64,000 bases of DNA from the NCBI RefSeq assembly GCF_040938485.1, contig NW_027271737.1:930001-994000 (forward strand), written 5' to 3'. The notes beneath the pieces are model-generated. The model saw only the letters and a program-made list of their open reading frames with translations. It did not search any database and was not told the origin of the DNA. This document shows, one piece after another, positions 23,635 through 63,300 of the stretch. The position numbers and the translations under genes were made by a program. The DNA comes from Diadema antillarum (lineage: Eukaryota). Position 1 is the first letter of the stretch. Every line of letters begins with the position of its first letter.

Positions 23635-26600
23635 ACCTGTGCATTGTGGTTGCTTATACCCCGTTTACAGTGCGGGGCTGGACCGAGTCGGGCCGGGCGA
23701 GCACGGCCTCAATTATCACGGTACTCGGCCGCGCAATTCTGTTTGATTTACAGTGGAGGGCTCAGCCCGGGCTTTTAATAAAACTTTTAATATTTGTCAT
23801 AGTGGCGCTCTGCTTGTACACAAACGATTATTTGGTACCGCATTATGCCCAGTTTCCTTTTACAGAGAGAAAAGGCCAGACTGCTTCCAGACCTTGGCCA
23901 AATGCGCGGCCATATGTTGAACCGCATTTGGCCATTTTTAAGGGTTTCCAGCGAAAGGAAGGCCAGGCTGAGCCCGATCTTTTCACTCACTGTAAACGGG
24001 GCCTAGGTTAATATGCTGGAGAGGCGTGTTACTTACTGCACATTATCTCATTGATAATTAAACAGAATTCACCACGACCAAGACACGAACAGAAGCAACA
24101 ACCAGACCGGGAACCGAAAGAGCAACAACTGTCATTGAACAAACTACTGCAACTCCTGAATCAACAACTACAACTCAGACAACTGTTACATCAACCACTA
24201 GTGCAAGGCAGGAATCTACAACGCCAGGTACTTTTTTACTTGCGTTTTTCTAGGACTCCTGTCCCCAGATTCGAAACCGGAAGGATTTCATTTATTACTA
24301 GAGGACAGTTGGACAATTTTTCGCGTTAACGTAACCTGATCTTCCTCTACATTCTGCCTAAATGTATTCAGGAAGCAAGTCAGTTTCCTACACTGAACAA
24401 ATGACTGAATACAAATGGTACTATCTCTGAATAAGTTGCACGTGTCATGTTTGCTGAACAAATGTACGCTTCATACTCGTCGTCATCGAGGTTATACCTA
24501 TCTACATTCAACTTTCCAACTTTACCAGGTGCTTGTAGGGAACCACTGGATGGTGTGGATCTTTATACTAATTTGCAAGTTTTACTGGATAACGAACGTG
24601 TTACTGTTCACGCTAATAGCGAATCACCTAAAAAGACAGATTTTGACAATCACAATAGGTGATACGCTGATACCGTATCACCTATAGCGTACACATTCTG
24701 CAACGTGCGTTTCTCACCTTGGATTTCCGATTCATTTTTGTTTCATTAATCAGCAACGGGCATGGAAACAACAGTAGTTACAACCGTTGTAACTACAACA
24801 GTACCTACCACCACGTCGAAACCCACAACAGTCACTGAAGCTACCACCACAGCTGTTACCACAACAACTCCGATGGGTACTACTAGGATGGAGGAGACCA
24901 CAACTCTTTCTACTACTACTACTCCTGCTCAGACTACAGCAATGGGTAAAGCCTTGTTCTTTTTTTTTTCTCTCTCTCTCTGGCAAATGAACTTTCTTTA
25001 TAAATTAATATCGTAAGTTAACACTTCCCTTCTATCCCAATTTAAGGCATGGAATTTAGTTGAGAATAATGTTCTAAATTGACTACTGGTGGCACTTTAA
25101 GACTTAGGAGATTGTCATCGCTACAATACAATACATTGTTATGTATCCCCAAAACAACATTTGCACCAACAATTCTAAAGTGGTAGTAGTGGAGACAACT
25201 GCTACTCAGTCGACCATCACATATACCACTTGAGCAACTGAGCAACCAACAACAGCACCAGGTAATTTCCATTCCATTCTAATATGATTCATGTCCCATT
25301 AAACATCAACGGTAGTGGAACGCTATGGTATGGCCAAAATATTTTACCCAATAACTGAGACGAACGATTGACCATTCTTTTCAGAATGCTACGAGCCACA
25401 AGAGCCATTGCAAGAAGTCACTACCTTGACATACGAAGCCAGTTTCAGTCAGCCTACTACTATCAGAGGAATAAAACTACCTGCCAGCAGCTTCCCTACA
25501 ATGACTACAGTAGTATTCAGGATCAAACGCGCCGAAGGAGATGAATGGATTATTGTTCCTGCACAGAGCACAGAATCAGGATCTGGTGACTTCTCCGGTT
25601 CAGGATCGGGAGAGTCAGAGAATCAGGTAAATCCTAAATAGACAAGTATTCCCTTGTTCTACACAAAACATACATTACCACTTCTTGTATTAATACGTTA
25701 TAAATGAAATGGGCGGTATTTCGCCTGTATCTTCTATTAACCCTTTATGTGCTTTGAGTGTTGATTTCCACGTACAACACTAAAGCATTGTTTACGATAT
25801 CCAACAACAGTGGATGATGATAGAGAAAGGCTTCACAATATCATCTATCTTCAATCTTCAGTGTACCAGTCCTACATGTAAAATTTCTACAGTTCATCTA
25901 CTCTGATTCCTCATACTAATACTTTTTATCTTTCTTAGAAAAGCATAATTATGTGACCCCTTTATTGTAGTCGTATTTCAAACATATTTGATTTTCCAGA
26001 TTGACATTTGCATTTTCTGAAAGTTGTTTGGTCCAGATATCAAATAGAAAAGTTGTACTAATGCACTGATTAATTTCGTTGTATTCTTCATAGGGAGAAG
26101 TGACGTTTTCTTTGAGTGACTCTGCTCCAACTAACCTCTGGCTTCCATCCGAATTGGGGCCTGTGCGAGCTATCGAAGCAAGCTTTGGAGATGCACTTAA
26201 TCTGGGAAATGAAATCGATGTCTACGGCTGTCAGGGTAGGTGCACTTAAACCGACTTATTCACAAACAGCACTCTTGTGTGGAAAAGTTCTTTTCAGTTC
26301 AAACCGAAAAATCTCGTTCACGAATAGAATTCAATCAGTTCTATCTAACGTGTCTGTCGTGATCCCCTTAGATGTTCTTATTACGCAGAAAAGGTATATG
26401 CTAAGATTTATTTCTAATCATTTGATTCTTTCTCCATTTATAGATTATAAGACACATTGTATTCCCTCCGTGCTCTATGAACTGTATAATCAGTGAACTT
26501 ACAGCATTATAAGTTGTTAGCTATTCCAATATCAATTCCCTTAAAACTGAGAGCATTTTCAGTTGTTAGCTATGGCCAGATCAATTTCATTAAAAAGGTT

Positions 26601-29600
26601 CCTATGGATTTATTTTCCCCTTTGTTTGTATATTACCGCAGGACCCACTCTGGCTCCAACCACGAGAGGTACCTCTCCCCCAGGTAATACATTCCATTTT
26701 TATAAAAATATTAGGTTTCCTCGGTTTGGTCAAATACCTTGAAACATTAAATAAGTAAAAAAAAAAAAATATCTCTTTTAAAGCTCAAGACCACAGCGAA
26801 GCGCCAAACGCTGCAATCTCATTTTTTCCTCCCTCAACATCTAAAGCGATGACACTGTTTTTTTTTTTTTAAATACACTTGAAATCATCATTTTAGTCAA
26901 GAAAAGAAGGAAAATTGTCTTTTAAGATATATTTCATACTTCAACTCTGTCTAATACGACTGTATTCGATCCAAAAGTAGAATGTTCTCATTTGTTTCTT
27001 TCTCTCAACATTTACAGAAACGACAACTCTGGGTCAGTCAGGTAGGTCTAAGTCTCCATTGTATTTCTAACCTTTTTGAATTAACATGTAGTAAAAAAAG
27101 AAAATCAGATATCACTAAATGATAATTGCTTTAAGATCAAACTGGTTTCGACTATTCTTCGCTATAAGTCTTCTCTTTAAAAACAAAAGTCTCTCAACTG
27201 TCAAAAACACTGAGTGAAAGATACATGTGTGTCGTTTTCTCCTTTTTTACAGAAGTTACAACAACAAGGACGCGAACGCGAGCGACGACTACTGCTCCAG
27301 GAACCGAGCAAACAACAGCAGTAGTAGAGGAAACTACTGCCACTCCTGAAGCAACAACTACAACTCAGACAACTGTTACATCGACCACAACAGCACGACA
27401 GGAATCTACAACGCCAGGTAACTTCTCACTTCCATTTTTCCAAGACTCGTGTCCGAAGACGTAAAACCTGAATTATGTCATGTAAAACTAGAAGGCGGTC
27501 ACTCAACTCTTTCGTGTTAGCGTAACCTCTTCCTTCATCTTCATTCTGCTTGATGGTATCCAGCAACCAAGTTTGCTTAACTAAACGAATGACTAAAATG
27601 CATATGTTAATATCTCTTTCAATGACTTTAACGTGTTACTGTTCACTTAACAATATTGTACCCTACAAATTCGTCGTCACGCCCGTCTACATCCAAGACA
27701 TTTCTTTTACTTACCAGCTGCTTGCAGAAAACCACTGGATGGCGTGGATCTTGATACTAAATTGGAAGTTTTACTTGACAACAATAAAACCAACCTTTGG
27801 AGCGAACCTACTTCAGAGAGGACAGTGAAGGTCACTGTCAAATCAGTCGATGACACCTCAGACCTGACGATTAAGATATCAGCTGTCAGCATAAGCACAA
27901 CCAATGGTTCACCTCCCGATAGCGTTACAATTGGTGTCCTCTCGTCCAGCGATGGACCTGTTGAACGCGAATTTACAGCTCAACCCGGAGACGATCAGAC
28001 TCAAGGAATGTACGAGCTTCGAAACTTGACTGGTTTGAATGAAGTTTATTTCGAAATCACTCTTCCTGACGACTACAACGTGGCAGATTCGGAATTGACG
28101 GTGACATTCAGAGGATGTATTGAAACAGGTAATTTCATTTCTTTATGCGCTGAAGAAGTCCTCATTCATCTCTTTTGTTCTTGTATATGATCTATACATT
28201 TCTCCCACTAAATTTAACCACTACCTGCTGATATTGCAACAGCATATCAACTTTGGAATTTTGTGTGATCACAAAAAGATGATTGGCAGGTTATTGATTT
28301 GGTAAATTTATGTCTATACATTTTTCACCCATTACTCCTGCACTTTAATTCTTTTTTCTAATTAATCAGTCCTCATCCATCTCTTTTGATCGTGTAATGA
28401 TCCATTCATATATAACCGGTAACTGCTGATATTCCAACAACACATCAACTTCAGAATTTTAAGTAATCACAAAGAAAAAAAAAAGATAATTGGCATGTTA
28501 TTGCTTTGGTAGGTTTATGTCCATATATTTCTTGCTGATTATTCTGGTACTTTATGACAGTGCACTCAACTTATCAGCAACAATTTCACACTACACTACA
28601 CTACGATTCATTATTGTTTCATTAATCAGCAACGGGCATGGAAACAACAGTAGTTACAACCGTTGTAACTACAACTGTACCTACCACCACGTCGAAACCC
28701 ACAACAGTCACTGAAGCTACCACCACAGCTGTTACCACAACAACTCCGATGGGTACTACTAGGATGGAGGAGACCACAACTCTTTCTACTACTACTACTC
28801 CTGCTCAGACTACAGCAATGGGTAAAGCCTTGTTCTTTTCTCTCTCTCCCTCTCTCTCTCTCTCTGGCAAATGAACTTTCTTTATAAATTAATATCGTAA
28901 GTTAACACTTCCCTTCTATCCCAATTTAAGGCATGGAATTTAGTTGAGAATAATGTTCTAAATTGACTACTGGTGGCATTTTAAGACTTGGGAGATTGTC
29001 ATCGCTACAATACAATACATTGTTATGTATTCCAAAACAACATTTGCACCAACAACTAAAGTGGTAGTAGTGGAGACAACTGCTACTCAGTCGACCATCA
29101 CATATACCACTTGAGCAACTGAGCAACCAACAACAGCACCAGGTAATTTCCATTCCATTCTAATACCATTCATGTCCCATTAGTATAATCATCAACGGTA
29201 GTGGAACGCTATGGTATGGCCAAAATATTTTACCCAATAACTGAGACGAACGATTGACCATTCTTTTCAGAATGCTACGAGCCACAAGAGCCATTGCAAG
29301 AAGTCACTGCCTTGACATACGAAGCCAGCTTCAGTCAGCCTACTACTATCAGAGGAATCAAACTACCTGCCAGCAGCTTCCCTACAATGACTACAGTAGT
29401 ATTCAGGATCAAACGCGCCGAAGGAGATGAATGGATTATTGTTCCTGCACAGAGCACAGAATCAGGATCTGGTGACTTCTCCGGTTCAGGATCGGGAGAG
29501 TCAGAGAGTCAGGTAAATCCTAAATAGACAAGTATTCCCTTGTTCTACACAGAACATACATTACCACTTCTTGTATTAATACGTTATAAAAGGAAAATGG

Positions 29601-32600
29601 GCGGTATTTCGCCTGTATCTTCTATTAACCCTTTATGTGCTTTGAGTGTTGATTTGCACGTACAACCCTAAAGCACTGTATCGATATCCAACGACCACGA
29701 ATGATAGAGAAATGCTTAACACTATCCTTTATCTTCAGTGTACCAGTCCTAGCTGTCAAATCTCTACTTATCATCTTCTCTGATTCATCGTACTAAAACT
29801 TGTTATCTTTCTTGGAAAAACATTATTATGTCACCCCTTTATTGCAGTCGTATTTCAAACATATTTGATTTTCCGGATTTGCATTTGCATTTTCTGAACA
29901 TTGTTTGGTCCAGACATCAAATTGGAAAGTTGTACTAATGCATTGATTAATTTCTTTGTATTCTTCATAGGGCGAAGTGACGTTTTCTTTGAGTGACTCT
30001 GCTCCAACGAACCTCTGGCTTCCATCCGAATTGGGGCCTGTGCGAGCTATCGAAGCAACCTTTGGAGAAGCACTTAATCTGGGAAATGAAATCGAGGTCT
30101 ACGGCTGTCAGGGTAGGTGCACTTTAAGCGACTTATTCAAAAACAACACTCTTATGTGGACAAGTTCTTGTGAGTTCAAACGGAAAATTCTCGTTCACGA
30201 TTAAAATTCAAACAGTTCTATCTAACGTGTCTCTCGTAATCCTTAAAAGTTCTAGTTACGCAGAAAAGGAATATACTATGATTTATTTCTAATCATTTGA
30301 TTCTTTATCCATGTATAGATTATAAGACACATTGCATTCACTCCGTGCGCTATGAGCGGTATAATAAGTGAACTTACAGCATTTTAAGTTGTTAGTTATG
30401 GCCAGATCAATTTCATTAAAAAGTTTCCTATGGATTTATTTTCCCCTTTGTTTGTATATTACCGCAGAACCCACTCCGGCTCCAACCACGAGAGGTACCT
30501 CTCCCCCAGGTAATACATTGTATTTTTATAGAAATATTAGGTTTTCTCGGTTTGGTCAAATACCATGAAACATTGAATAAGTAAAAAAAATAATAATATT
30601 TCTTTTAAAGCTCAATACCACAGCGAAGCGCCAAACGCTGCAATCTCATTTTTTTTCCTCAACATCTAAAGCGATGACACTGTTTTTTTTTTTTCAAAAT
30701 ACACTTGAAATCATCATCTAAGTCAAGGAAAGAAGGAAAATTGTCTTTGAAGATATAATTATTTCATATTTCACCACTGTCTAATACGACTGTATTCGAT
30801 CCAGAAGGAGAATGTTCTCATTTGTTTCTTTCTCTCAACATTTACAGAAACGACAACTCTGGGTCAGTCAGGTAGGTCTACGTCTCCATTGTATTTCTAA
30901 CCTTTTTGAATTAACATGTACCAAAAAAAGAAAATCAGATATCACTAAATGATAATTGCTTTAAGATCAAACTGGTTTCGACTATTCTTCGCCATAAGTC
31001 TTCTCTTTAAAAACAAAAGTCTCCCAACTGTCAAAAACACTGAGTGAAAGATACATGTGTGTCGTTTTCTCCTTTTTCACAGAAGTGACAACAAGGACGC
31101 GAACGCGAGCGACAACGACTACTGCTCCAGGAACCGAGCAAACAACAGCAGTAGTAGAGGAAACTACTGCCACTCCTGAAGCAACAACTACAACTCAGAC
31201 AACTGTTACATCGACCACAACAGCACGACAGGAATCTACAACGCCAGGTAACTTCTCACTTCCATTTTTCCAAGACTCGTGTCCGAAGACGTAAAACCTG
31301 AATTATGTCATGTAAAACTAGAAGGCGGTCACTCAACTCTTTCGTGTTAGCGTAACCTCTTCCTTCATCTTCATTCTGCTTGATGGTATCCAGCAACCAA
31401 GTTTGCTTAACTAAACGAATGACTAAAATGCATATGTTAATATCTCTTTCAATGACTTTAACGTGTTACTGTTCACTTAACAATATTGTACCCTACAAAT
31501 TCGTCGTCACGCCCGTCTACATCCAAGACATTTCTTTTATTTACCAGCTGCTTGCAGAAAACCACTGGATGGCGTGGATCTTGATACTAAATTGGAAGTT
31601 TTACTTGACAACAATAAAACCAACCTTTGGAGCGAACCTACTTCAGAGAGGACAGTGAAGGTCACTGTCAAATCAGTCGATGACACCTCAGACCTGACGA
31701 TTAAGATATCAGCTGTCAGCATAAGCACAACCAATGGTTCACCTCCCGATAGCGTTACAATTGGTGTCCTCTCGTCCAGCGATGGACCTGTTGAACGCGA
31801 ATTTACAGCTCAACCCGGAGACGATCAGACTCAAGGAATGTACGAGCTTCGAAACTTGACTGGTTTGAATGAAGTTTATTTCGAAATCACTCTTCCTGAC
31901 GACTACAACGTGGCAGATTCGGAATTGACGGTGACATTCAGAGGATGTATTGAAACAGGTAATTTCATTTCTTTATGCGCTGAAGAAGTCCTCATTCATC
32001 TCTTTTGTTCTTGTATATGATCTATACATTTCTCCCACTAAATTTAACCACTACCTGCTGATATTGCAACAGCATATCAACTTTGGAATTTTGTGTGATC
32101 ACAAAAAGATGATTGGCAGGTTATTGATTTGGTAAATTTATGTCTATACATTTTTCACCCATTACTCCTGCACTTTAATTCTTTTTTCTAATTAATCAGT
32201 CCTCATCCATCTCTTTTGATCGTGTAATGATCCATTCATATATAACCGGTAACTGCTGATATTCCAACAACACATCAACTTCAGAATTTTAAGTCATCAC
32301 AAAGAAAAAAAAAGATAATTGGCATGTTATTGCTTTGGTAGGTTTATGTCCATATATTTCTTGCTGATTATTCTGGTACTTTATAACAGTGCACTCAACT
32401 TATCAGCAACAATTTCACACTACACTACACTACGATTCATTATTGTTTCATTAATCAGCAACGGGCATGGAAACAACAGTAGTTACAACCGTTGTAACTA
32501 CAACTGTACCTACCACCACGTCGAAACCCACAACAGTCACTGAAGCTACCACCACAGCTGTTACCACAACAACTCCGATGGGTACTACTAGGATGGAGGA

Positions 32601-32663
32601 GACCACAACTCTTTCTACTACTACTACTCCTGCTCAGACTACAGCAATGGGTAAAGCCTTGTT

Positions 32664-32698
<35 letters not shown>

Positions 32699-35600
32699 CA
32701 AATGAACTTTCTTTATAAATTAATATCGTAAGTTAACACTTCCCTTCTATCCCAATTTAAGGCATGGAATTTAGTTGAGAATAATGTTCTAAATTGACTA
32801 CTGGTGGCATTTTAAGACTTAGGAGATTGTCATCGCTACAATACAATACATTGTTATGTATTCCAAAACAACATTTGCACCAACAACTAAAGTGGTAGTA
32901 GTGGAGACAACTGCTACTCAGACGACCATCACATATACCACTTGAGCAACTGAGCAACCAACAACAGCACCAGGTAATTTCCATTCCATTCTAATACGAT
33001 TCATGTCCCATTAGTATAAACATCAACGGTAGTGGAACGCTATGGTATGGCCAAAATATTTTACCAAATAACTGAGACGAACGATTGACCATTCTTTTCA
33101 GAATGCTACGAGCCACAAGAGCCATTGCAAGAAGTCACTGCCTTGACATACGAAGCCAGCTTCAGTCAGCCTACTACTATCAGAGGAATCAAACTACCTG
33201 CCAGCAGCTTCCCTACAATGACTACAGTAGTATTCAGGATCAAACGCGCCGAAGGAGATGAATGGATTATTGTTCCTGCACAGAGCACAGAATCAGGATC
33301 TGGTGACTTCTCCGGTTCAGGATCGGGAGAGTCAGAGAGTCAGGTAAATCCTAAATAGACAAGTATTCCCTTGTTCTACACAGAACATACATTACCACTT
33401 CTTGTATTAATACGTTATAAAAGGAAAATGGGCGGTATTTCGCCTGTATCTTCTATTAACCCTTTATGTGCTTTGAGTGTTGATTTGCACGTACAACCCT
33501 CAAGCACTGTATCGATATCCAACGACCATGAATGATAGAGAAATGCTTAACAATATCCTTTATCTTCAGTGTACCAGTCCTAGCTGTCAAATCTCTACTT
33601 ATCATCTTCTCTGATTCATCGTACTAAAACTTGTTATCTTTCTTGGAAAAACATTATTATGTCACCCCTTTATTGCAGTCGTATTTCAAACATATTTGAT
33701 TTTCCGAATTTGCATTTGCATTTTCTGAACATTGTTTGGTCCAGACATCAAATTGGAAAGTTGTACTAATGCATTGATTAATTTCTTTGTATTCTTCATA
33801 GGGCGAAGTGACGTTTTCTTTGAGTGACTCTGCTCCAACGAACCTCTGGCTTCCATCCGAATTGGGGCCTGTGCGAGCTATCGAAGCAACCTTTGGAGAA
33901 GCACTTAATCTAGGAAATGAAATCGAGGTCTACGGCTGTCAGGGTAGGTGCACTTTAAGCGACTTATTCAAAAACAACACTCTTATGTGGACAAGTTCTT
34001 GTGAGTTCAAACGGAAAATTCTCGTTCACGATTAAAATTCAAACAGTTCTATCTAACGTGTCTCTCGTAATCCTTAAAAGTTCTAGTTACGCAGAAAAGG
34101 AATATACTATGATTTATTTCTAATCATTTGATTCTTTATCCATGTATAGATTATAAGACACATTGCATTCACTCCGTGCGCTATGAGCGGTATAATAAGT
34201 GAACTTACAGCATTTTAAGTTGTTAGTTATGGCCAGATCAATTTCATTAAAAAGGTTCCTATGGATTTATTTTCCCCTTTGTTTGTATATTACCGCAGGA
34301 CCCACTCCGGCTCCAACCACGAGAGGTACCTCTCCCCCAGGTAATACATTGTATTTTTATAGAAATATTAGGTTTTCTCGGTTTGGTCAAATACCATGAA
34401 ACATTGAATAAGTAAAAAAAATAATAATATTTCTTTTAAAGCTCAATACCACAGCGAAGCGCCAAACGCTGCAATCTCATTTTTTTTCCTCAACATCTAA
34501 AGCGATGACACTGTTTTTTTTTTTCAAAATACACTTGAAATCATCATCTAAGTCAAGGAAAGAAGGAAAATTGTCTTTGAAGATATAATTATTTCATATT
34601 TCACCACTGTCTAATACGACTGTATTCGATCCAGAAGGAGAATGTTCTCATTTGTTTCTTTCTCTCAACATTTACAGAAACGACAACTCTGGGTCAGTCA
34701 GGTAGGTCTACGTCTCCATTGTATTTCTAACCTTTTTGAATTAACATGTACCAAAAAAAGAAAATCAGATATCACTAAATGATAATTGCTTTAAGATCAA
34801 ACTGGTTTCGACTATTCTTCGCCATAAGTCTTCTCTTTAAAAACAAAAGTCTCCCAACTGTCAAAAACACTGAGTGAAAGATACATGTGTGTCGTTTTCT
34901 CCTTTTTCACAGAAGTGACAACAAGGACGCGAACGCGAGCGACAACGACTACTGCTCCAGGAACCGAGCAAACAACAGCAGTAGTAGAGGAAACTACTGC
35001 CACTCCTGAAGCAACAACTACAACTCAGACAACTGTTACATCGACCACAACAGCACGACAGGAATCTACAACGCCAGGTAACTTCTCACTTCCATTTTTC
35101 CAAGACTCGTGTCCGAAGACGTAAAACCTGAATTATGTCATGTAAAACTAGAAGGCGGTCACTCAACTCTTTCGTGTTAGCGTAACCTCTTCCTTCATCT
35201 TCATTCTGCTTGATGGTATCCAGCAACCAAGTTTGCTTAACTAAACGAATGACTAAAATGCATATGTTAATATCTCTTTCAATGACTTTAACGTGTTACT
35301 GTTCACTTAACAATATTGTACCCTACAAATTCGTCGTCACGCCCGTCTACATCCAAGACATTTCTTTTATTTACCAGCTGCTTGCAGAAAACCACTGGAT
35401 GGCGTGGATCTTGATACTAAATTGGAAGTTTTACTTGACAACAATAAAACCAACCTTTGGAGCGAACCTACTTCAGAGAGGACAGTGAAGGTCACTGTCA
35501 AATCAGTCGATGACACCTCAGACCTGACGATTAAGATATCAGCTGTCAGCATAAGCACAACCAATGGTTCACCTCCCGATAGCGTTACAATTGGTGTCCT

Positions 35601-36493: not shown

Positions 36494-36528
<35 letters not shown>

Positions 36529-40321: not shown

Positions 40322-40356
<35 letters not shown>

Positions 40357-52300: not shown

Positions 52301-55300
52301 CATCAAAAGAGACTGTTTTTCAATTACATCTGGAATTTCCGAACATCAAGATATGTAAAACAATAAATCATCATCTAAGTCATGGAAAGCGCTATATACG
52401 TAATTTGTCTTTCAAGACCATAGATTATTTGATATTTCAGCTCTGTCTAATACGAATATAATTGATCCATAACGACAATGTTCTCATGTTATTGTTTTTT
52501 TATCTCAACATTTACAGAAACGACAACTCTGGGTCAGTCAGGTAGGTCTAAGTCTCCATTATTATAATTGCAATTTTTGAATTAACAATTACACACACAC
52601 AAATGAGTTATCACGAAAAAATTATTGCTTTAGTATCAAACTGGTTTCGACTCTTCTTCGCTCTAACTCTTCTCTTAAATAAAAAAAAACAACTTTCTCT
52701 CAACTCTCATAATCACTTAGTGATAGATACATGCGTATCGTGTTTTTTTTTTTTTTTTTTTTTTTACAGAAGTCACAACAAGGTCGCGAACGCGAGCGAC
52801 AACTACTACTGCTCCAGGAACCGAGCAAACAACAGCTGTGGTAGAGGAAACTACTGCAACTCCTGAAGCAACAACTACAACTCAGACAACTGTTACATCG
52901 ACCACAACAGTAGGACAGGAATCTACAACGCCAGGTAACTTATCACTTTCATTTTTGCAGAACTCGTGTTCGAAGACTTAAAACCTGAATTATGTCATGT
53001 AAAACTAGAAGGCGGTCACTCAACTCTTTCATGTTAGCATAACCTCTTCCTTCATCTACATTCTGCTTTATGGTATCCAGCAACCCAGTTTGCTTAACTA
53101 AACGAATGACTAAAATGCATATGTTAATATCTCTCTCAATGACTTTAACGTGTTACTGTTCACTTAACAATATTGTACCCTACAAATTCGTCGTCACGCC
53201 CATCTACATCCAAGACATTTCTTTTATTTACCAGCTGCTTGCAGAAAACCACTGGATGGCGTGGATCTTGATACTAAATTGGAAGTTTTACTTGACAACA
53301 ATAAAACCAACCTTTGGAGCGAACCTACTTCAGAGAGGACAGTGAAGGTCACTGTCAAATCAGTCGATGACACCTCAGACCTGACGATTAAGATATCAGC
53401 TGTCAGCATAAGCACAACCAATGGTTCACCTCCCGATAGCGTTACAATTGGTGTCCTCTCGTCCAGCGATGGACCTGTTGAACGCGAATTTACAGCTCAA
53501 CCCGGAGACGATCAGACTCAAGGAATGTACGAGCTTCGAAACTTGACTGGTTTGAATGAAGTTTATTTCGAAATCACTCTTCCTGACGACTACAACGTGG
53601 CAGATTCGGAATTGACGGTGACATTCAGAGGATGTATTGAAACAGGTAATTTCATTTCTTTATGCGCTGAAGAAGTCCTCATTCATCTCTTTTGTTCTTG
53701 TATATGATCTATACATTTCTCCCACTAAATTTAACCACTACCTGCTGATATTGCAACAGCATATCAACTTTGGAATTTTGTGTGATCACAAAAAGATGAT
53801 TGGCAGGTTATTGATTTGGTAAATTTATGTTTATACATTTTTCACCCATTACTCCTGCACTTTAATTCTTTTTTCTAATTAATCAGTCCTCATCCATCTC
53901 TTTTGATCGTGTAATGATCCATTCATATATAACCGGTAACTGCTGATATTCCAACAACACATCAACTTCAGAATTTTAAGTAATCACAAAGAAAAAAAAA
54001 GATAATTGGCATGTTATTGCTTTGGTAGGTTTATGTCCATATATTTCTTGCTGATTATTCTGGTACTTTATAACAGTGCACTCAACTTATCAGCAACAAT
54101 TTCACACTACACTACACTACGATTCATTTTTGTTTCATTAATCAGCAACGGGCATGGAAACAACAGTAGTTACAACCGTTGTAACTACAACTGTACCTAC
54201 CACCACGTCGAAACCCACAACAGTCACTGAAGCTACAACCACAGCTGTTACCACAACAACTCCAATGGGTACTACTAAAACGGAGGAGACCACAAGTGTT
54301 ACTACTGCTACCCCTGCTAAGACCACAACAATGGGTAAAGCCTTGTTGTTTATTTTTTCTCTTTGGTTCAATGGGCTTTCTTTAGAAATTCATCGTGTAA
54401 AGTCACCCTAACCACCCTATCCCATTCCTAGTCATGCCAGTGTATTAATGAGAAAACCTTATTTTTTTTATCATCATCAAAAGAGACTGTTTTTCAATTA
54501 CATCTGGAATTTCCGAACATCAAGATATGTAAAACAATAAATCATCATCTAAGTCATGGAAAGCGCTATATACGTAATTTGTCTTTCAAGACCATAGATT
54601 ATTTGATATTTCAGCTCTGTCTAATACGAATATAATTGATCCATAACGACAATGTTCTCATGTTATTGTTTTTTTATCTCAACATTTACAGAAACGACAA
54701 CTCTGGGTCAGTCAGGTAGGTCTAAGTCTCCATTATTATAATTGCAATTTTTGAATTAACAATTACACACACACAAATGAGTTATCACGAAAAAATTATT
54801 GCTTTAGTATCAAACTGGTTTCGACTCTTCTTCGCTCTAACTCTTCTCTTAAATAAAAAAAAACAACTTTCTCTCAACTCTCATAATCACTTAGTGATAG
54901 ATACATGCGTATCGTGTTTTTTTTTTTTTTTTTTTTTTTACAGAAGTCACAACAAGGTCGCGAACGCGAGCGACAACTACTACTGCTCCAGGAACCGAGC
55001 AAACAACAGCTGTGGTAGAGGAAACTACTGCAACTCCTGAAGCAACAACTACAACTCAGACAACTGTTACATCGACCACAACAGTAGGACAGGAATCTAC
55101 AACGCCAGGTAACTTATCACTTTCATTTTTGCAGAACTCGTGTTCGAAGACTTAAAACCTGAATTATGTCATGTAAAACTAGAAGGCGGTCACTCAACTC
55201 TTTCATGTTAGCATAACCTCTTCCTTCATCTACATTCTGCTTTATGGTATCCAGCAACCCAGTTTGCTTAACTAAACGAATGACTAAAATGCATATGTTA

Positions 55301-56524
55301 ATATCTCTCTCAATGACTTTAACGTGTTACTGTTCACTTAACAATATTGTACCCTACAAATTCGTCGTCACGCCCATCTACATCCAAGACATTTCTTTTA
55401 TTTACCAGCTGCTTGCAGAAAACCACTGGATGGCGTGGATCTTGATACTAAATTGGAAGTTTTACTTGACAACAATAAAACCAACCTTTGGAGCGAACCT
55501 ACTTCAGAGAGGACAGTGAAGGTCACTGTCAAATCAGTCGATGACACCTCAGACCTGACGATTAAGATATCAGCTGTCAGCATAAGCACAACCAATGGTT
55601 CACCTCCCGATAGCGTTACAATTGGTGTCCTCTCGTCCAGCGATGGACCTGTTGAACGCGAATTTACAGCTCAACCCGGAGACGATCAGACTCAAGGAAT
55701 GTACGAGCTTCGAAACTTGACTGGTTTGAATGAAGTTTATTTCGAAATCACTCTTCCTGACGACTACAACGTGGCAGATTCGGAATTGACGGTGACATTC
55801 AGAGGATGTATTGAAACAGGTAATTTCATTTCTTTATGCGCTGAAGAAGTCCTCATTCATCTCTTTTGTTCTTGTATATGATCTATACATTTCTCCCACT
55901 AAATTTAACCACTACCTGCTGATATTGCAACAGCATATCAACTTTGGAATTTTGTGTGATCACAAAAAGATGATTGGCAGGTTATTGATTTGGTAAATTT
56001 ATGTCTATACATTTTTCACCCATTACTCCTGCACTTTAATTCTTTTTTCTAATTAATCAGTCCTCATCCATCTCTTTTGATCGTGTAATGATCCATTCAT
56101 ATATAACCGGTAACTGCTGATATTCCAACAACACATCAACTTCAGAATTTTAAGTAATCACAAAGAAAAAAAAAGATAATTGGCATGTTATTGCTTTGGT
56201 AGGTTTATGTCCATATATTTCTTGCTGATTATTCTGGTACTTTATAACAGTGCACTCAACTTATCAGCAACAATTTCACACTACACTACACTACGATTCA
56301 TTATTGTTTCATTAATCAGCAACGGGCATGGAAACAACAGTAGTTACAACCGTTGTAACTACAACTGTACCTACCACCACGTCGAAACCCACAACAGTCA
56401 CTGAAGCTACCACCACAGCTGTTACCACAACAACTCCGATGGGTACTACTAGGATGGAGGAGACCACAACTCTTTCTACTACTACTACTCCTGCTCAGAC
56501 TACAGCAACGGGTAAAGCCTTGTT

Positions 56525-56555
<31 letters not shown>

Positions 56556-59500
56556 GGCAAATGAACTTTCTTTATAAATTAATATCGTAAGTTAACACTT
56601 CCCTTCTATCCCAATTTAAGGCATGGAATTTAGTTGAGAATAATGTTCTAAATTGACTACTGGTGGCATTTTAAGACTTAGGAGATTGTCATCGCTACAA
56701 TACAATACATTGTTATGTATTCCAAAACAACATTTGCACCAACAACTAAAGTGGTAGTAGTGGAGACAACTGCTACTCAGTCGACCATCACATATACCAC
56801 TTGAGCAACTGAGCAACCAACAACAGCACCAGGTAATTTCCATTCCATTCTAATACGATTCATGTCCCATTAGTATAAACATCAACGGTAGTGGAACGCT
56901 ATGGTATGGCCAAAATATTTTACCAAATAACTGAGACGAACGATTGACCATTCTTTTCAGAATGCTACGAGCCACAAGAGCCATTGCAAGAAGTCACTGC
57001 CTTGACATACGAAGCCAGCTTCAGTCAGCCTACTACTATCAGAGGAATCAAACTACCTGCCAGCAGCTTCCCTACAATGACTACAGTAGTATTCAGGATC
57101 AGGCGCGCCGAAGGAGATGAATGGATTATCGTTCCTGCACAGAGCACAGAATCAGGATCTGGTGACTTCTCCGGTTCAGGATCGGGAGAGTCAGAGAGTC
57201 AGGTAAATCCTAAATAGACAAGTATTCCCTTGTTCTACACAGAACATACATTACCACTTCTTGTATTAATACGTTATAAAAGGAAAATGGGCGGTATTTC
57301 GCCTGTATCTTCTATTAACCCTTTATGTGCTTTGAGTGTTGATTTGCACGTACAACCCTAAAGCACTGTATCGATATCCAACGACCATAAATGATAGAGA
57401 AATGCTTAACAATATCCTTTATCTTCAGTGTACCAGTCCTAGCTGTCAAATCTCTACTTATCATCTTCTCTGATTCCTCGTACTAAAACTTGTTATCTTT
57501 CTTGGAAAAACATTATTATGTCACCCCTTTATTGCAGTCGTATTTCAAACATATTTGATTTTCCGGATTTGCATTTGCATTTTTGAACATTGTTTGGTCC
57601 AGACATCAAATAGGAAAGTTGTACTAATGCATTGATTAATTTCTTTGTATTCTTCATAGGGCGAAGTGACGTTTTCTTTGAGTGACTCTGCTCCAACGAA
57701 CCTCTGGCTTCCATCCGAATTGGGGCCTGTGCGAGCTATCGAAGCAACCTTTGGAGAAGCACTTAATCTAGGAAATGAAATCGAGGTCTACGGCTGTCAG
57801 GGTAGGTGCACTTTAAGCGACTTATTCAAAAACAACACTCTTATGTGGACAAGTTCTTGTGAGTTCAAACGGAAAATTCTCGTTCACGATTAAAATTCAA
57901 ACAGTTCTATCTAACGTGTCTCTCGTAATCCTTAAAAGTTCTAGTTACGCAGAAAAGGAATATACTATGATTTATTTCTAATCATTTGATTCTTTATCCA
58001 TGTATAGATTATAAGACACATTGCATTCACTCCGTGCGCTATGAGCGGTATAATCAGTGAACTTACAGCATTTTAAGTTGTTAGTTATGGCCAGATCAAT
58101 TTCATTAAAAAGGTTCCTATGGATTTATTTTCCCCTTTGTTTGTATATTACCGCAGGACCCACTCCGGCTCCAACCACGAGAGGTACCTCTCCCCCAGGT
58201 AATACATTACATTTTTATAGAAATATTAGGTTTTCTCGGTTTGGTCAAATACCATGAAACATTGAATAAGTATAAAAAATAATAATATTTCTTTTAAAGC
58301 TCAATACCACAGCGAAGCGCCAACGCTGCAATCTCATTTTTTTCCTCAACATCTAAAGCGATGTCACTGTTTTTTTTTTCAAAATACACTTGAAATCATC
58401 ATCTAAGTCAAGGAAAGAAGGAAAATTGTCTTTGAAGATATAATTATTTCATATTTCACCTCCGTCTAATACGACTGTATTCGATCCAGAAGGAGAATGT
58501 TCTCATTTGTTTCTTTCTCTCAACATTTACAGAAACGACAACTCTGGGTCAGTCAGGTAGGTCTACGTCTTCATTGTATTTCTAACCTTTTTGAATTAAC
58601 ATGTACCAAAAAAAGAAAATCAGATATCACTAAATGATAATTGCTTTAAGATCAAACTGGTTTCGACTATTCTTCGCCATAAGTCTTCTCTTTAAAAACA
58701 AATGTATCTCAACTGTCAAAAACACTGAGTGAAAGATACATGTGTGTCGTTTTCTCCTTTTTCACAGAAGTGACAACAAGGACGCGAACGCGAGCGACAA
58801 CGACTACTGCTCCAGGAACCGAGCAAACAACAGCAGTAGTAGAGGAAACTACTGCCACTCCTGAAGCAACAACTACAACTCAGACAACTGTTACATCGAC
58901 CACAACAGCACGACAGGAATCTACAACGCCAGGTAACTTCTCACTTCCATTTTTCCAAGACTCGTGTCCGAAGACGTAAAACCTGAATTATGTCATGTAA
59001 AACTAGAAGGCGGTCACTCAACTCTTTCGTGTTAGCGTAACCTCTTCCTTCATCTTCATTCTGCTTGATGGTATCCAGCAACCAAGTTTGCTTAACTAAA
59101 CGAATGACTAAAATGCATACGTTAATATCTCTTTCAATGACTTTAACGTGTTACTGTTCACTTAACAATATTGTACCCTACAAATTCGTCGTCACGCCCG
59201 TCTACATCCAAGACATTTCTTTTATTTACCAGCTGCTTGCAGAAAACCACTGGATGGCGTGGATCTCGATACTAAATTGGAAGTTTTACTTGACAACAAT
59301 AAAACCAACCTTTGGAGCGAACCTACTTCAGAGAGGACAGTGAAGGTCACTGTCAAATCAGTCGATGACACCTCAGACCTGACGATTAAGATATCAGCTG
59401 TCAGCATAAGCACAACCAATGGTTCACCTCCCGATAGCGTTACAATTGGTGTCCTCTCGTCCAGCGATGGACCTGTTGAACGCGAATTTACAGCTCAACC

Positions 59501-60348
59501 CGGAGACGATCAGACTCAAGGAATGTACGAGCTTCGAAACTTGACTGGTTTGAATGAAGTTTATTTCGAAATCACTCTTCCTGACGACTACAACGTGGCA
59601 GATTCGGAATTGACGGTGACATTCAGAGGATGTATTGAAACAGGTAATTTCATTTCTTTATGCGCTGAAGAAGTCCTCATTCATCTCTTTTGTTCTTGTA
59701 TATGATCTATACATTTCTCCCACTAAATTTAACCACTACCTGCTGATATTGCAACAGCATATCAACTTTGGAATTTTGTGTGATCACAAAAAGATGATTG
59801 GCAGGTTATTGATTTGGTAAATTTATGTCTATACATTTTTCACCCATTACTCCTGCACTTTAATTCTTTTTTCTAATTAATCAGTCCTCATCCATCTCTT
59901 TTGATCGTGTAATGATCCATTCATATATAACCGGTAACTGCTGATATTCCAACAACACATCAACTTCAGAATTTTAAGTAATCACAAAGAAAAAAAAAGA
60001 TAATTGGCATGTTATTGCTTTGGTAGGTTTATGTCCATATATTTCTTGCTGATTATTCTGGTACTTTATAACAGTGCACTCAACTTATCAGCAACAATTT
60101 CACACTACACTACACTACGATTCATTATTGTTTCATTAATCAGCAACGGGCATGGAAACAACAGTAGTTACAACCGTTGTAACTACAACTGTACCTACCA
60201 CCACGTCGAAACCCACAACAGTCACTGAAGCTACCACCACAGCTGTTACCACAACAACTCCGATGGGTACTACTAGGATGGAGGAGACCACAACTCTTTC
60301 TACTACTACTACTCCTGCTCAGACTACAACAATGGGTAAAGCCTTGTT

Positions 60349-60379
<31 letters not shown>

Positions 60380-63300
60380 GGCAAATGAACTTTCTTTATA
60401 AATTAATATCGTAAGTTAACACTTCCCTTCTATCCCAATTTAAGGCATGGAATTTAGTTGAGAATAATGTTCTAAATTGACTACTGGTGGCATTTTAAGA
60501 CTTAGGAGATTGTCATCGCTACAATACAATACATTGTTATGTATTCCAAAACAACATTTGCACCAACAACTAAAGTGGTAGTAGTGGAGACAACTGCTAC
60601 TCAGTCGACCATCACATATACCACTTGAGCAACTGAGCAACCAACAACAGCACCAGGTAATTTCCATTCCATTCTAATACGATTCATGTCCCATTAGTAT
60701 AAACATCAACGGTAGTGGAACGCTATGGTATGGCCAAAATATTTTACCAAATAACTGAGACGAACGATTGACCATTCTTTTCAGAATGCTACGAGCCACA
60801 AGAGCCATTGCAAGAAGTCACTGCCTTGACATACGAAGCCAGCTTCAGTCAGCCTACTACTATCAGAGGAATCAAACTACCTGCCAGCAGCTTCCCTACA
60901 ATGACTACAGTAGTATTCAGGATCAAACGCGCCGAAGGAGATGAATGGATTATTGTTCCTGCACAGAGCACAGAATCAGGATCTGGTGACTTCTCCGGTT
61001 CAGGATCGGGAGAGTCAGAGAGTCAGGTAAATCCTAAATAGACAAGTATTCCCTTGTTCTACACAGAACATACATTACCACTTCTTGTATTAATACGTTA
61101 TAAAAGGAAAATGGGCGGTATTTCGCCTGTATCTTCTATTAACCCTTTATGTGCTTTGAGTGTTGATTTGCACGTACAACCCTAAAGCACTGTATCGATA
61201 TCCAACGACCATAAATGATAGAGAAATGCTTAACAATATCCTTTATCTTCAGTGTACCAGTCCTAGCTGTCAAATCTCTACTTATCATCTTCTCTGATTC
61301 ATAGTACTAAAACTTGTTATCTTTCTTGGAAAAACATTATTATGTCACCCCTTTATTGCAGTCGTATTTCAAACATATTTGATTTTCCGGATTTGCATTT
61401 GCATTTTCTGAACATTGTTTGGTCCAGACATCAAATTGGAAAGTTGTACTAATGCATTGATTAATTTCTTTGTATTCTTCATAGGGCGAAGTGACGTTTT
61501 CTTTGAGTGACTCTGCTCCAACGAACCTCTGGCTTCCATCCGAATTGGGGCCTGTGCGAGCTATCGAAGCAATCTTTGGAGAAGCACTTAATCTAGGAAA
61601 TGAAATCGAGGTCTACGGCTGTCAGGGTAGGTGCACTTTAAGCGACTTATTCAAAAACAACACTCTTATGTGGACAAGTTCTTGTGAGTTCAAACGGAAA
61701 ATTCTCGTTCACGATTAAAATTCAAACAGTTCTATCTAACGTGTCTCTCGTAATCCTTAAAAGTTCTAGTTACGCAGAAAAGGAATATACTATGATTTAT
61801 TTCTAATCATTTGATTCTTTATCCATGTATAGATTATAAGACACATTGCATTCACTCCGTGCGCTATGAGCGGTATAATAAGTGAACTTACAGCATTTTA
61901 AGTTGTTAGTTATGGCCAGATCAATTTCATTAAAAAGGTTCCTATGGATTTATTTTCCCCTTTGTTTGTATATTACCGCAGGACCCACTCCGGCTCCAAC
62001 CACGAGAGGTACCTCTCCCCCAGGTAATACATTGTATTTTTATAGAAATATTAGGTTTTCTCGGTTTGGTCAAATACCATGAAACATTGAATAAGTAAAA
62101 AAAATAATAATATTTCTTTTAAAGCTCAATACCACAGCGAAGCGCCAAACGCTGCAATCTCATTTTTTTCCTCAACATCTAAAGCGATGACACTGTTTTT
62201 TTTTTTTCAAAATACACTTGAAATCATCATCTAAGTCAAGGAAAGAAGGAAAATTGTCTTTGAAGATATAATTATTTCATATTTCACCTCTGTCTAATAC
62301 GACTGTATTCGATCCAGAAGGAGAATGTTCTCATTTGTTTCTTTCTCTCAACATTTACAGAAACGACAACTCTGGGTCAGTCAGGTAGGTCTACCTCTCC
62401 ATTGTATTTCTAACCTTTTTCAATTAACATGTACCAAAAAAAGAAAATCAGATATCACTAAATGATAATTGCTTTAAGATCAAACTGGTTTCAACTATTC
62501 TTCGCCATAAGTCTTCTCTTTAAAAACAAATGTCTCTCAACTGTCAAAAACACTGAGTGAAAGATACATGTGTGTCGTTTTCTCCTTTTTCACAGAAGTG
62601 ACAACAAGGACGCGAACGCGAGCGACAACGACTACTGCTCCAGGAACCGAGCAAACAACAGCAGTAGTAGAGGAAACTACTGCCACTCCTGAAGCAACAA
62701 CTACAACTCAGACATCTGTTACATCGACCACAACAGCACGACAGGAATCTACAACGCCAGGTAACTTCTCACTTCCATTTTTCCAAGACTCGTGTCCGAA
62801 GACGTAAAACCTGAATTATGTCATGTAAAACTAGAAGGCGGTCACTCAACTCTTTCGTGTTAGCGTAACCTCTTCCTTCATCTTCATTCTGCTTGATGGT
62901 ATCCAGCAACCAAGTTTGCCTAACTAAACGAATGACTAAAATGCATATGTTAATATCTCTTTCAATGACTTTAACGTGTTACTGTTCACTTAACAATATT
63001 GTACCCTACAAATTCGTCGTCACGCCCGTCTACATCCAAGACATTTCTTTTATTTACCAGCTGCTTGCAGAAAACCACTGGATGGCGTGGATCTTGATAC
63101 TAAATTGGAAGTTTTACTTGACAACAATAAAACCAACCTTTGGAGCGAACCTACTTCAGAGAGGACAGTGAAGGTCACTGTCAAATCAGTCGATGACACC
63201 TCAGACCTGACGATTAAGATATCAGCTGTCAGCATAAGCACAACCAATGGTTCACCTCCCGATAGCGTTACAATTGGTGTCCTCTCGTCCAGCGATGGAC

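What the first reader, a model, noticed from the sequence alone, without database searches (positions are those of the whole stretch)
25385..61626. Split discoidin-like domain with a Ser-Gly GAG-attachment-like insert: mucin-proteoglycan hybrid
Seen: exons E+F have the same 1-0-1 phase pattern as the canonical FA58C exons, with similar second-exon length (142 vs 145 nt). They align to it (EASFSQPTTIRGI vs QVDFSVPTRVTGI; IEVYGCQ vs IELRGCQ). At the intron position sits ESGSGDFSGSGSGESE(S/N)Q, with five SG dipeptides flanked by acidic residues, intact in 7 copies. Established: acidic-flanked SG repeats are xylosyltransferase sites, as in serglycin and the syndecan-1 FSGSG motif. Inference: each long unit could carry GAG chains, so the L:S ratio would set GAG density.
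Basis: partly seen in the sequence, partly recalled or inferred. Interest (0 to 1): 0.7.

Follow-up and report, generated by a model that had tools for sequence, protein, structure and literature searches.

The report
Sea-urchin mucin bead with Ser-Gly loop
A giant mucus-type gene of the sea urchin Diadema antillarum repeats a small discoidin-fold domain whose exposed loop carries a conserved acidic Ser-Gly cluster that looks like a sugar-chain (glycosaminoglycan) attachment site, but no attachment has been shown.

Summary
Seven intact E+F exon pairs lie at 25385-61626 on the + strand. Each has AG/GT borders, phases 1-0-1 and a 142-nt second exon. Each encodes a 128-residue Cys-to-Cys domain. 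Its last 18 exon-E codons read ESGSGDFSGSGSGESE(S/N)Q.

The window is Diadema antillarum. It is the downstream part of a VWD-C8-TIL gel-forming-mucin-like gene.

A public-run contig joins exons D-E-F-G-H across GT..AG introns. So E and F are spliced together and the Ser-Gly stretch is in mRNA.

An AlphaFold2 model (pLDDT 80) is a beta sandwich. Its best matches are F5/8-type-C/discoidin and CBM32-like domains (Z 8-9.5). The Ser-Gly stretch is a low-confidence loop between two confident strands. Pfam and profile comparison do not detect FA58C, so the domain is discoidin-like by fold and gene structure, not by sequence.

All 16 aligned copies keep 4-6 SG dipeptides, 3-5 acidic residues and at most one basic residue (0 in 15 copies). 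This includes D. setosum copies and one copy only 48% identical. The motif fits published xylosyltransferase preferences, but glycosaminoglycan attachment is untested.

The scan has already described a 'discoidin-bead' mucin, also first read as a mucin-proteoglycan, on another piece of this genome (s1-215040).

Verdict: a real, conserved feature and a plausible, unproven proteoglycan site.

The parts
25385..26235 (+). E/F pair 1 (E 25385-25626, F 26094-26235). Ser-Gly loop codons 25573-25626, the ...ESENQ variant.
29271..30112 (+). E/F pair 2, the reference copy (E 29271-29512, F 29971-30112). Loop codons 29459-29512. GT..AG intron 29513-29970.
   Evidence: The spliced contig of run X6 covers 29270-29510 joined to 29969-30113.
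33102..33943 (+). E/F pair 3 (E 33102-33343, F 33802-33943)
36932..37773 (+). E/F pair 4 (E 36932-37173, F 37632-37773)
40760..41478 (+). Variant pair. Exon E is shortened to 119 nt (40760-40878) by a 123-nt in-frame deletion that removes 41 codons, including most of the Ser-Gly loop. F (41337-41478) is intact.
44441..45267 (+). E/F pair 5 (E 44441-44682, F 45126-45267)
56961..57801 (+). E/F pair 6 (E 56961-57202, F 57660-57801)
60785..61626 (+). E/F pair 7 (E 60785-61026, F 61485-61626)
27253..30871 (+). One complete long unit of 406 codons. Exons: A 27253-27417 (Thr-rich), B 27718-28128 (single-exon Cys-to-Cys domain), D 28630-28821 (Thr-rich), E, F, G 30468-30509, H 30848-30871. All are phase 1-1 except E and F.
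   Evidence: Joints B-D, D-E, E-F, F-G, G-H and H-A in run X6.
46254..54948 (+). Four short units (A-B-D-H, about 2.17 kb each) that lack E, F and G and so lack the Ser-Gly loop.
   Evidence: An X6 contig joins a D variant to H (28795 to 30847).
5062..6232 (+). Canonical FA58C domain of the same gene in two exons (5062-5366 and 6088-6232), with phases 1-0-1.
   Evidence: Pfam PF00754 E 1.7e-8; exon borders
1..2470 (+). TIL/VWC exons that form the C-terminal end of the annotated upstream model P0015. That model has three VWD-C8-TIL units and 15 further E/F domains.

Best explanation
E+F encode a minimal discoidin-fold 'bead' of about 110 structured residues. It is most likely a shortened derivative of the two-exon FA58C domain found in the same gene. 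The bead is repeated many times between Thr-rich O-glycosylated linkers in a giant secreted VWD-C8-TIL mucin of Diadema.

At the hairpin that holds the conserved phase-0 intron, exon E ends in 18 extra codons. These form a flexible, acidic loop with five Ser-Gly dipeptides, three of them in Gly-Ser-Gly context.

Shown: the exons, their splicing, the fold class, the low model confidence of the loop, and its conservation.

Inferred: in the Golgi, xylosyltransferase starts chondroitin- or heparan-sulfate chains on one or more of these serines. Each long unit would then add a small cluster of polyanionic chains to the mucin, raising its charge, hydration and swelling. Units without E/F would add none.
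For: Exons and splicing:
- Seven intact pairs have correct splice borders.
- One 668-nt contig of run X6 joins D-E-F-G-H with no mismatch in E, across GT..AG gaps.
- NCBI models of D. antillarum (P0002, 100% identical) and D. setosum use the same E-F junction.

Fold:
- AlphaFold2 on 16 copies gives pLDDT 80 and pTM 0.73, with eight strands. Residues 65-77 are below pLDDT 50 between confident strands.
- The Foldseek list is led by, and mostly made of, factor VIII/V C2, neuropilin b1, retinoschisin and bacterial F5/8-type-C domains.
- The best 19 VIA-align rows are all galactose-binding-like domains: Z 9.5-8.2, 96-107 residues aligned, rmsd about 3 A.
- Cys2 and Cys127 are invariant.
- E/F has the same 1-0-1 phases as the canonical FA58C, and the intron lies within about 4 residues of the equivalent place once the 18 residues are removed.

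Loop conservation:
- G66, S67, G68, G72-G76 and S78 are invariant in 16 copies.
- Every copy has 4-6 SG, 3-5 Asp/Glu and at most one Lys/Arg. This includes the copy that shares only 49 of 112 positions elsewhere.
- 14 of the 15 upstream copies in P0015 match the strict pattern SGSG-[D/E]-x-SGSGSG; the divergent 15th has a variant cluster.
- The five SG are encoded with four different Ser codons, so this is not a simple microsatellite.
- Such a window occurs once in 577,437 residues of 117 other giant VWD proteins.

Fit to known acceptor preferences:
- Ser-Gly with acidic neighbours. Gly at -1 and +1 is needed by XT1, acidic residues raise activity and basic residues lower it (PMC13038410).
- Repeated Ser-Gly plus an acidic cluster favour heparan sulfate (PMC4598785).
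- The SULF2 chondroitin-sulfate sequon contains DFSG, and adding three SG repeats lengthened the attached chain (PMC13405426).
- All mapped human urinary CS sites lie in disordered or low-complexity stretches (PMC10424144).
Against: - There is no biochemical evidence of any kind.
- The literature read here says no sequence predicts glycosaminoglycan attachment, and an acidic cluster or Ser-Gly alone was insufficient in SULF1.
- The acidic flank here (one Glu/Asp before, and Glu/Asp-Ser-Glu/Asp after) is weaker than the five-acid cluster of the SULF2 sequon.
- The loop sits inside a folded domain, whereas mapped sites are usually in long disordered regions.
- Sequence methods do not confirm FA58C homology.
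- The model rests on 16 closely related sequences.
- I could not read coordinates, so I do not know which face of the sandwich carries the loop.
- The tissue of expression is unknown.
- Run X6 is not on record as RNA. Its cDNA nature is inferred from the spliced contigs.
Confidence: 0.45

Rival explanations
1. The loop is functional but carries no glycosaminoglycan. It could be a flexible, negatively charged spacer, a calcium- or cation-binding site used in mucin packing, or a site of serine phosphorylation or short O-glycans.
For: The loop is conserved yet disordered and acidic. Ser-x-Glu (FAM20C-type) triplets occur in the D. antillarum copies (S75-G-E77). No sequence rule predicts glycosaminoglycan addition.
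Against: Position 77 is Asp in 10 of the 16 aligned copies, so a Ser-x-Glu site is not conserved. Gly-Ser-Gly and the count of SG dipeptides are conserved. A plain spacer would not need invariant alternating Ser and Gly with four different Ser codons.
Confidence: 0.33
2. The Ser-Gly stretch is a neutral low-complexity insertion, from exon-end extension or slippage, that is tolerated in a surface loop and spread by duplication and gene conversion of the repeat units.
For: Units in the window are 98-100% identical, so the seven copies are not independent. One unit has lost most of the loop by an in-frame deletion and still keeps its frame.
Against: The loop is kept in the older, diverged upstream array (copies 73-83% identical to the window copy) and in the 48% copy. 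It is kept in both Diadema species, with its SG count and its acidic, non-basic make-up preserved. Mean column identity in the loop (0.89) is not lower than in the folded part (0.84).
Confidence: 0.1
3. E/F is not derived from FA58C. It is another member of the wide galactose-binding-like beta-sandwich class (for example CBM-like), and the shared exon phases are a coincidence of phase 1-1 exon shuffling.
For: The top VIA-align hit is a CBM62, tied with F5/8-type-C domains. Foldseek E-values are only 0.007-0.05 with TM 0.4-0.5. There is no Pfam hit, and hhalign probability is 5% or less.
Against: The internal phase-0 intron is the only one of its kind in the unit and falls at the matching hairpin. 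The one local match that hhalign finds is the FSxPTxxxGI strand of the gene's own FA58C. Both domains start E-(D)-C-Y and end GCQ at phase-1 borders.
Confidence: 0.12

Closest known systems
F5/8 type C (discoidin, FA58C) domains in VWD proteins: hemolectin/hemocytin, SCO-spondin, lophotrochozoan mucin-like proteins
   Same: A beta-sandwich fold with a Cys next to each end, placed inside a VWD-C8-TIL protein. Such combinations are documented (PMC4948705) and are seen among the hits. The same gene holds a canonical FA58C with the same exon phases.
   Different: E/F is about 35 residues shorter at the N-terminal side and is not detected by Pfam. It is repeated at least 23 times between mucin linkers and carries an 18-residue Ser-Gly loop absent from the canonical domain.
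Ser-Gly glycosaminoglycan attachment clusters of syndecan-1, glypicans and serglycin
   Same: Repeated Ser-Gly with acidic neighbours and a hydrophobic residue beside them (D-F-S-G-S-G). The features are those reviewed in PMC4598785. The syndecan and glypican sequences themselves are from my own knowledge.
   Different: Those sites lie in long unstructured ectodomain stretches of small core proteins and are experimentally proven. Here the cluster is a loop of a folded domain in a gel-forming mucin and is untested.
SULF2 chondroitin-sulfate sequon EDQDDKDGGDFSGWGG
   Same: It contains D-F-S-G preceded by acidic residues. It works in human, hamster and fly cells (PMC13405426).
   Different: The sequon needs a seven-residue cluster with five acidic residues upstream. 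The Diadema loop has only one or two acidic residues before the first serines, and the rest follow them.
Mucin-like proteoglycans such as lubricin/PRG4 and the Ser-Gly repeat region of aggrecan (own knowledge, not checked here)
   Same: One core protein combines dense mucin-type O-glycosylated stretches with glycosaminoglycan sites.
   Different: Those are not VWD-type gel-forming mucins, and their sites are not built into a repeated folded domain.

Membership tests
F5/8 type C (discoidin) domain, Pfam PF00754 | Significant match to the family profile | tested here: not met
   No PF00754 hit for exon E, exon F or the spliced model P0002. hhalign against the gene's own FA58C gives P 0.008-0.012 and probability 5% or less. 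A profile search of PDB sequences finds only artificial Gly-Ser linkers.
F5/8 type C (discoidin) domain, Pfam PF00754 | Eight-stranded distorted jelly-roll beta sandwich of the galactose-binding-like class | tested here: met
   The AlphaFold2 model has pLDDT 80. Foldseek top hits are FVIII/FV C2, neuropilin b1 and retinoschisin. VIA-align gives Z 9.5-8.2 with 96-107 residues aligned to discoidin, CBM32 and related domains.
F5/8 type C (discoidin) domain, Pfam PF00754 | A Cys at each end of the domain, which in FA58C form the disulfide that ties the N and C termini together | tested here: inconclusive
   Cys2 and Cys127 are invariant in 16 copies and lie next to the two ends. The bond itself cannot be verified without coordinates or experiment.
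F5/8 type C (discoidin) domain, Pfam PF00754 | Long ligand-binding 'spike' loops at one end of the sandwich | tested here: inconclusive
   E/F lacks about 34 N-terminal residues of the canonical domain. Nearly all of its non-loop residues align to the core of targets about 150 residues long. This suggests the spikes are shortened, but no coordinates were available to check.
Proteoglycan core protein (xylose-linked glycosaminoglycan) | Ser-Gly acceptor with Gly at -1/+1 and nearby acidic, non-basic residues | tested here: met
   S67, S73 and S75 are in Gly-Ser-Gly. Each copy has 4-6 SG, 3-5 Asp/Glu and 0-1 Lys/Arg. The criteria are from PMC13038410 and PMC4598785.
Proteoglycan core protein (xylose-linked glycosaminoglycan) | Acceptor lies in an exposed, flexible stretch of a secreted protein | tested here: met
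   Residues 65-77 are below pLDDT 50 between confident strands. The upstream model has a signal-peptide-like start (my reading of the N-terminal residues printed, no predictor run) and VWD-C8-TIL units.
Proteoglycan core protein (xylose-linked glycosaminoglycan) | A glycosaminoglycan chain is actually attached | not testable with these tools
   This needs glycoproteomics or expression in xylosyltransferase-proficient and -deficient cells.
Gel-forming mucin (VWD type) | N-terminal VWD-C8-TIL units plus long Pro/Thr/Ser-rich stretches | tested here: met
   The D. setosum orthologue P0001 has three VWD, three C8 and four TIL matches. The D. antillarum model P0015 on the window's contig ends inside window 1-2470.
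Gel-forming mucin (VWD type) | C-terminal VWC/CTCK dimerisation end, and one continuous transcript | not tested
   The array runs off the window at 64000. Continuity from the annotated model into the window's array rests on a phase-compatible donor and acceptor, not on RNA.

The most novel reading that the evidence does not exclude
Diadema makes a gel-forming mucin that is also a true proteoglycan. Each of at least 23 discoidin beads would carry a cluster of up to three to five chondroitin- or heparan-sulfate chains on a purpose-built loop. The polymer would combine the network chemistry of VWD mucins with an aggrecan-like bottle-brush, and gain or loss of long repeat units would tune the chain density.
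Probability: 0.35. Interest if true: 0.65.

Novelty: new variant of a known kind. Interest (0 to 1): 0.45.

Why it matters
Gel-forming mucins and proteoglycans are usually treated as separate classes of hydrated extracellular polymers. In the literature searches run here I found no VWD-type gel-forming mucin described with glycosaminoglycan sites built into a repeated folded domain. If the loop is xylosylated, this gene would show a modular way to combine the two: one exon-end extension in a discoidin bead, multiplied by unit duplication. It would also be a natural test case for the still unsolved question of what makes a Ser-Gly a glycosaminoglycan site inside a folded domain. If the loop is not xylosylated, it is an ordinary acidic loop in a lineage-specific mucin domain. 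In both cases the public annotation of this locus is badly fragmented (many 122- to 238-residue 'uncharacterized proteins').

Tried and rejected
- Pfam on exons E and F and on the spliced model found no discoidin hit, only sub-threshold noise.
- A profile search of PDB sequences with the 16-copy alignment returned only engineered Gly-Ser linkers, driven by the loop.
- An exhaustive HMMER search of 1.84 billion representatives with exon E found only Diadema proteins and one bacterial FN3-repeat protein (P0003, 14 weak stretches on residues 32-66). Its Pfam content shows it is unrelated, so I treated it as spurious.
- A profile search for short relatives (70-224 residues) also found only Diadema.
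- A search with the VWD region of the orthologue found no closer echinoderm relative carrying E/F or the Ser-Gly motif.
- hhalign of E/F against the single-exon domains of the same gene (B, 8915-9376, 10970-11390, 13630-14058) and against two D. setosum domains gave nothing significant.
- I could not find which face of the sandwich carries the loop, because the tools do not give model coordinates.
- The syndecan cloning paper held no searchable text for the motif.
- Runs X1 and X2 (echinoderm metagenome) gave single unspliced contigs over the E/intron border and within the E-F intron, which say nothing on splicing.
- The N run at 13122-13256 was left untouched.
Full report
WHAT IS THERE

From about 24 kb to its end, the window holds a kilobase-scale tandem array on the + strand. 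Long units are about 3.83 kb and short units about 2.17 kb. Most units are 98-100% identical.

I mapped the exons of one long unit from splice signals and reading frames:
- A 27253-27417
- B 27718-28128
- D 28630-28821
- E 29271-29512
- F 29971-30112
- G 30468-30509
- H 30848-30871

All exons are phase 1-1 except E (1-0) and F (0-1). The unit encodes 406 residues, in this order:
- a Thr-rich linker
- a 137-residue Cys-to-Cys domain (B)
- a second Thr-rich linker
- the 128-residue E+F domain
- a short Pro/Thr tail

BLAST mapping of these exons gives the following layout:
- seven intact E/F pairs
- one unit with a damaged E
- four contiguous short units (46254-54948) that are A-B-D-H only
- a last unit that runs off the window

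The degenerate pattern for ESGSGDFSGSG occurs seven times on the + strand, against none in 100 shuffles. All seven E/F pairs have AG/GT borders and open frames. Six encode ...SGESESQ and the first encodes ...SGESENQ.

The canonical FA58C of the same gene is at 5062-5366 and 6088-6232 (305 and 145 nt, phases 1-0-1). Its first exon reaches Pfam PF00754 at 1.7e-8.

The Ser-Gly stretch is the last 18 codons of exon E, directly before the phase-0 donor CAG|GTAAAT.

The eighth unit (E at 40760-40878) has a 123-nt in-frame deletion that removes 41 codons, including most of the stretch.

ORGANISM AND GENE

An exhaustive HMMER search with exon E found:
- a 222-residue NCBI model of Diadema antillarum that is 100% identical
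- a 5918-residue 'uncharacterized protein' of Diadema setosum

The D. setosum protein has three VWD, three C8 and four TIL matches plus VWC. These are followed by 15 E/F domains between Thr-rich linkers.

A 6208-residue model on the window's own contig (P0015) has the same build, also with 15 E/F domains. Its last residues are the TIL/VWC exons at window 1-2470.

That model ends by reading into an intron (...SKWKV). The sequence there offers a phase-1 donor, CCTCCTA|GTAAGT. A phase-compatible acceptor follows at about 3068. The gene therefore probably continues through the FA58C and into the window's array. That is inference, not RNA evidence.

The nearest relatives of the VWD region outside Diadema are about 23-34% identical:
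- IgGFc-binding protein
- SCO-spondin
- hemocytin
- mucin-2/5AC-like proteins

Many of them carry PF00754. FA58C domains inside VWD mucin-like proteins are already described (PMC4948705).

SPLICING

I laid four public runs on 27200-31500. Run X6 holds a 668-nt contig with these pieces:
- 28627-28820
- 29270-29510
- 29969-30113
- then pieces at 30469-30506, 30845-30868 and 31080 onward

The gaps are GT..AG, and there are no mismatches in exon E. Other X6 contigs join B to D.

One further X6 contig joins a D variant to H, skipping 2051 bases. That is the short-unit form.

X6 is not on record as RNA. Five consecutive intron-sized GT..AG skips in one contig are what cDNA gives.

So E and F are spliced together and the Ser-Gly codons are retained. 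NCBI's models use the same junction.

FOLD

Pfam does not recognise E/F. A profile search of PDB sequences finds only artificial linkers.

I aligned the window copy with the 15 D. setosum copies (A1) and ran AlphaFold2. The result was mean pLDDT 80 and pTM 0.73. The model has eight strands, and residues 65-77 fall below pLDDT 50 between the confident strands 61-63 and 83-88.

Foldseek against the PDB gave no hit at E 0.001 or better. Its list is led by, and mostly made of, discoidin domains at E 0.007-0.05 and TM 0.4-0.53:
- factor VIII and V C2
- neuropilin b1/b2
- retinoschisin
- bacterial F5/8-type-C domains

The Foldseek-independent VIA-align search gave Z 9.5-8.2, with 96-107 residues aligned at about 3 A. 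Its hits were CBM62, F5/8-type-C, neuropilin, DDR1/2, muskelin, CASPR2 and discoidin I.

Z of 7-8 can be a common arrangement. Here, however, the best 19 rows all belong to one fold class and cover the whole domain.

Cys2 and Cys127 are invariant and lie next to the two ends, as in FA58C.

hhalign against the gene's own FA58C is weak (P about 0.01). On its own it picks the FSxPTxxxGI strand. In global mode it shows a gap of about 34 residues at the N-terminal side of E/F.

After the 18 loop residues are removed, the phase-0 intron lies about 33 residues after that strand, against 37 in the canonical domain.

My reading is that E/F is a shortened FA58C derivative whose intron-bearing hairpin was lengthened. 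This is supported by fold and gene structure and is not established by sequence statistics.

THE LOOP

Conservation across the 16 aligned copies:
- G66, S67, G68, G72, S73, G74, S75, G76 and S78 are invariant.
- Each copy has 4-6 SG, 3-5 Asp/Glu and 0-1 Lys/Arg.
- The most diverged copy shares 49 of 112 positions elsewhere and keeps five SG and four acidic residues.
- Mean column identity is 0.89 in the loop against 0.84 in the rest.

Of the 15 upstream D. antillarum copies, 14 match the strict pattern SGSG-[D/E]-x-SGSGSG. The divergent 15th has a variant cluster, DGSGEISGSGSGSGDS.

The five SG use the Ser codons TCA, TCT, TCC and TCG. The stretch is therefore not a young microsatellite.

A comparable 20-residue window (at least 4 SG, at least 3 acidic, no basic residue) occurs once in 577,437 residues of 117 other giant VWD proteins.

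For a segment modelled as disordered, this points to selection on composition and on the Gly-Ser-Gly pattern.

DOES IT CARRY GLYCOSAMINOGLYCAN?

The motif fits what the papers I read state:
- Chains start on Ser of Ser-Gly (PMC4598785).
- Human XT1 tolerates poorly any change of Gly at -1 and +1. Acidic residues raise its activity and basic residues lower it (PMC13038410).
- Repeated Ser-Gly and an acidic cluster favour heparan sulfate.
- The SULF2 chondroitin-sulfate sequon contains DFSG. Adding three SG repeats lengthened the attached chain (PMC13405426).
- All mapped human urinary CS sites lie in disordered or low-complexity stretches (PMC10424144).
- Sea urchins make chondroitin-sulfate matrix (PMC11632948).

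Against this:
- The same papers say no consensus predicts attachment.
- An acidic cluster or Ser-Gly alone was not enough in SULF1.
- The acidic flank here is modest.

For the phosphorylation alternative (FAM20C, Ser-x-Glu), position 77 is Asp in 10 of 16 copies. That motif is therefore not what is conserved.

I put xylosylation at roughly 0.4-0.45. A functional but glycosaminoglycan-free acidic loop is at about 0.33, and a neutral insertion at about 0.1.

DISTRIBUTION AND NOVELTY

No E/F domain or Ser-Gly loop was found outside Diadema. This holds for three searches:
- the exhaustive representative search
- the short-protein profile search
- the giant VWD proteins fetched

The searches have limits. 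The exhaustive search used exon E alone, and the word-based searches have length windows.

All Diadema models are named 'uncharacterized protein'. I found no paper on such a domain.

The scan itself has already described a 'giant sea-urchin mucin with discoidin beads', also first read as a mucin-proteoglycan, on another piece of this genome (s1-215040). That agrees with the present reading but is not independent evidence.

VERDICT

Three points are supported by computation and one public run:
- the split discoidin-like reading
- the surface-loop reading
- the splicing

The proteoglycan reading is plausible and conserved in sequence, but it is untested. I class the finding as a new variant of known kinds, with moderate interest.

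OPERATORS' RULES

The N run at 13122-13256 was not touched. Read laying was given 4301 letters.

Noticed in passing
window 2440-3110: The annotated upstream model (P0015, as P0001 in D. setosum) ends ...PPPPPPSKWKV by reading into an intron. A phase-1 donor CCTCCTA|GTAAGT and a phase-compatible acceptor after a long C run at about 3068 suggest the gene continues into the window. The array itself is annotated as many 122- to 238-residue fragment proteins.
   Followed up: partly
window 40760-40878: The exon E of this unit has a 123-nt in-frame deletion (equivalent to 37029-37151 of the neighbouring unit). It removes three predicted strands and most of the Ser-Gly loop. It may be a real allele, a decaying unit or an assembly slip.
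   Followed up: partly
window 28962-29111: An open Thr-rich stretch (TTFAPTTKVVVVETTATQSTITYTT) lies between exons D and E and resembles the linker before E in the upstream array. The X6 contig skips it, so it may be a decayed or alternative exon.
   Followed up: no
window 24107-24700: The first array unit has a diverged exon A (83% identity). In place of exon B it has only a truncated B-like stretch (ACREPLDGVDLYTNLQVLLDNE...) that soon ends in a stop.
   Followed up: no
window 8915-9376, 10970-11390, 13630-14058 and exon B 27718-28128: These single-exon Cys-to-Cys domains of about 140 residues have no Pfam hit and no significant profile similarity to E/F or to each other's neighbours in my tests. 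Another finding of the scan (s1-208784) reads them as diverged discoidin-like domains. I did not fold them.
   Followed up: partly
window 11804-12694: One large Thr/Pro/Ser-rich mucin exon of about 297 codons holds a 24-nt tandem repeat at 12127-12225 (4 copies). It is unlike the short cassette exons of the array.
   Followed up: no
protein P0016 (second D. antillarum contig of 1,098,286 nt): A second, 96% identical model with 11 E/F domains lies on another contig, which also holds further 222-residue fragment models. It may be the other haplotype or a recent paralogue.
   Followed up: no
window 27200-31500, run X3 (organism A): Contigs 90-99% alike cover nearly the whole unit, introns included, at high depth. 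They probably come from DNA of a close relative or a different individual. One contig 'goes back' 3244 bases (31269 to 28026), as expected for a tandem array.
   Followed up: no
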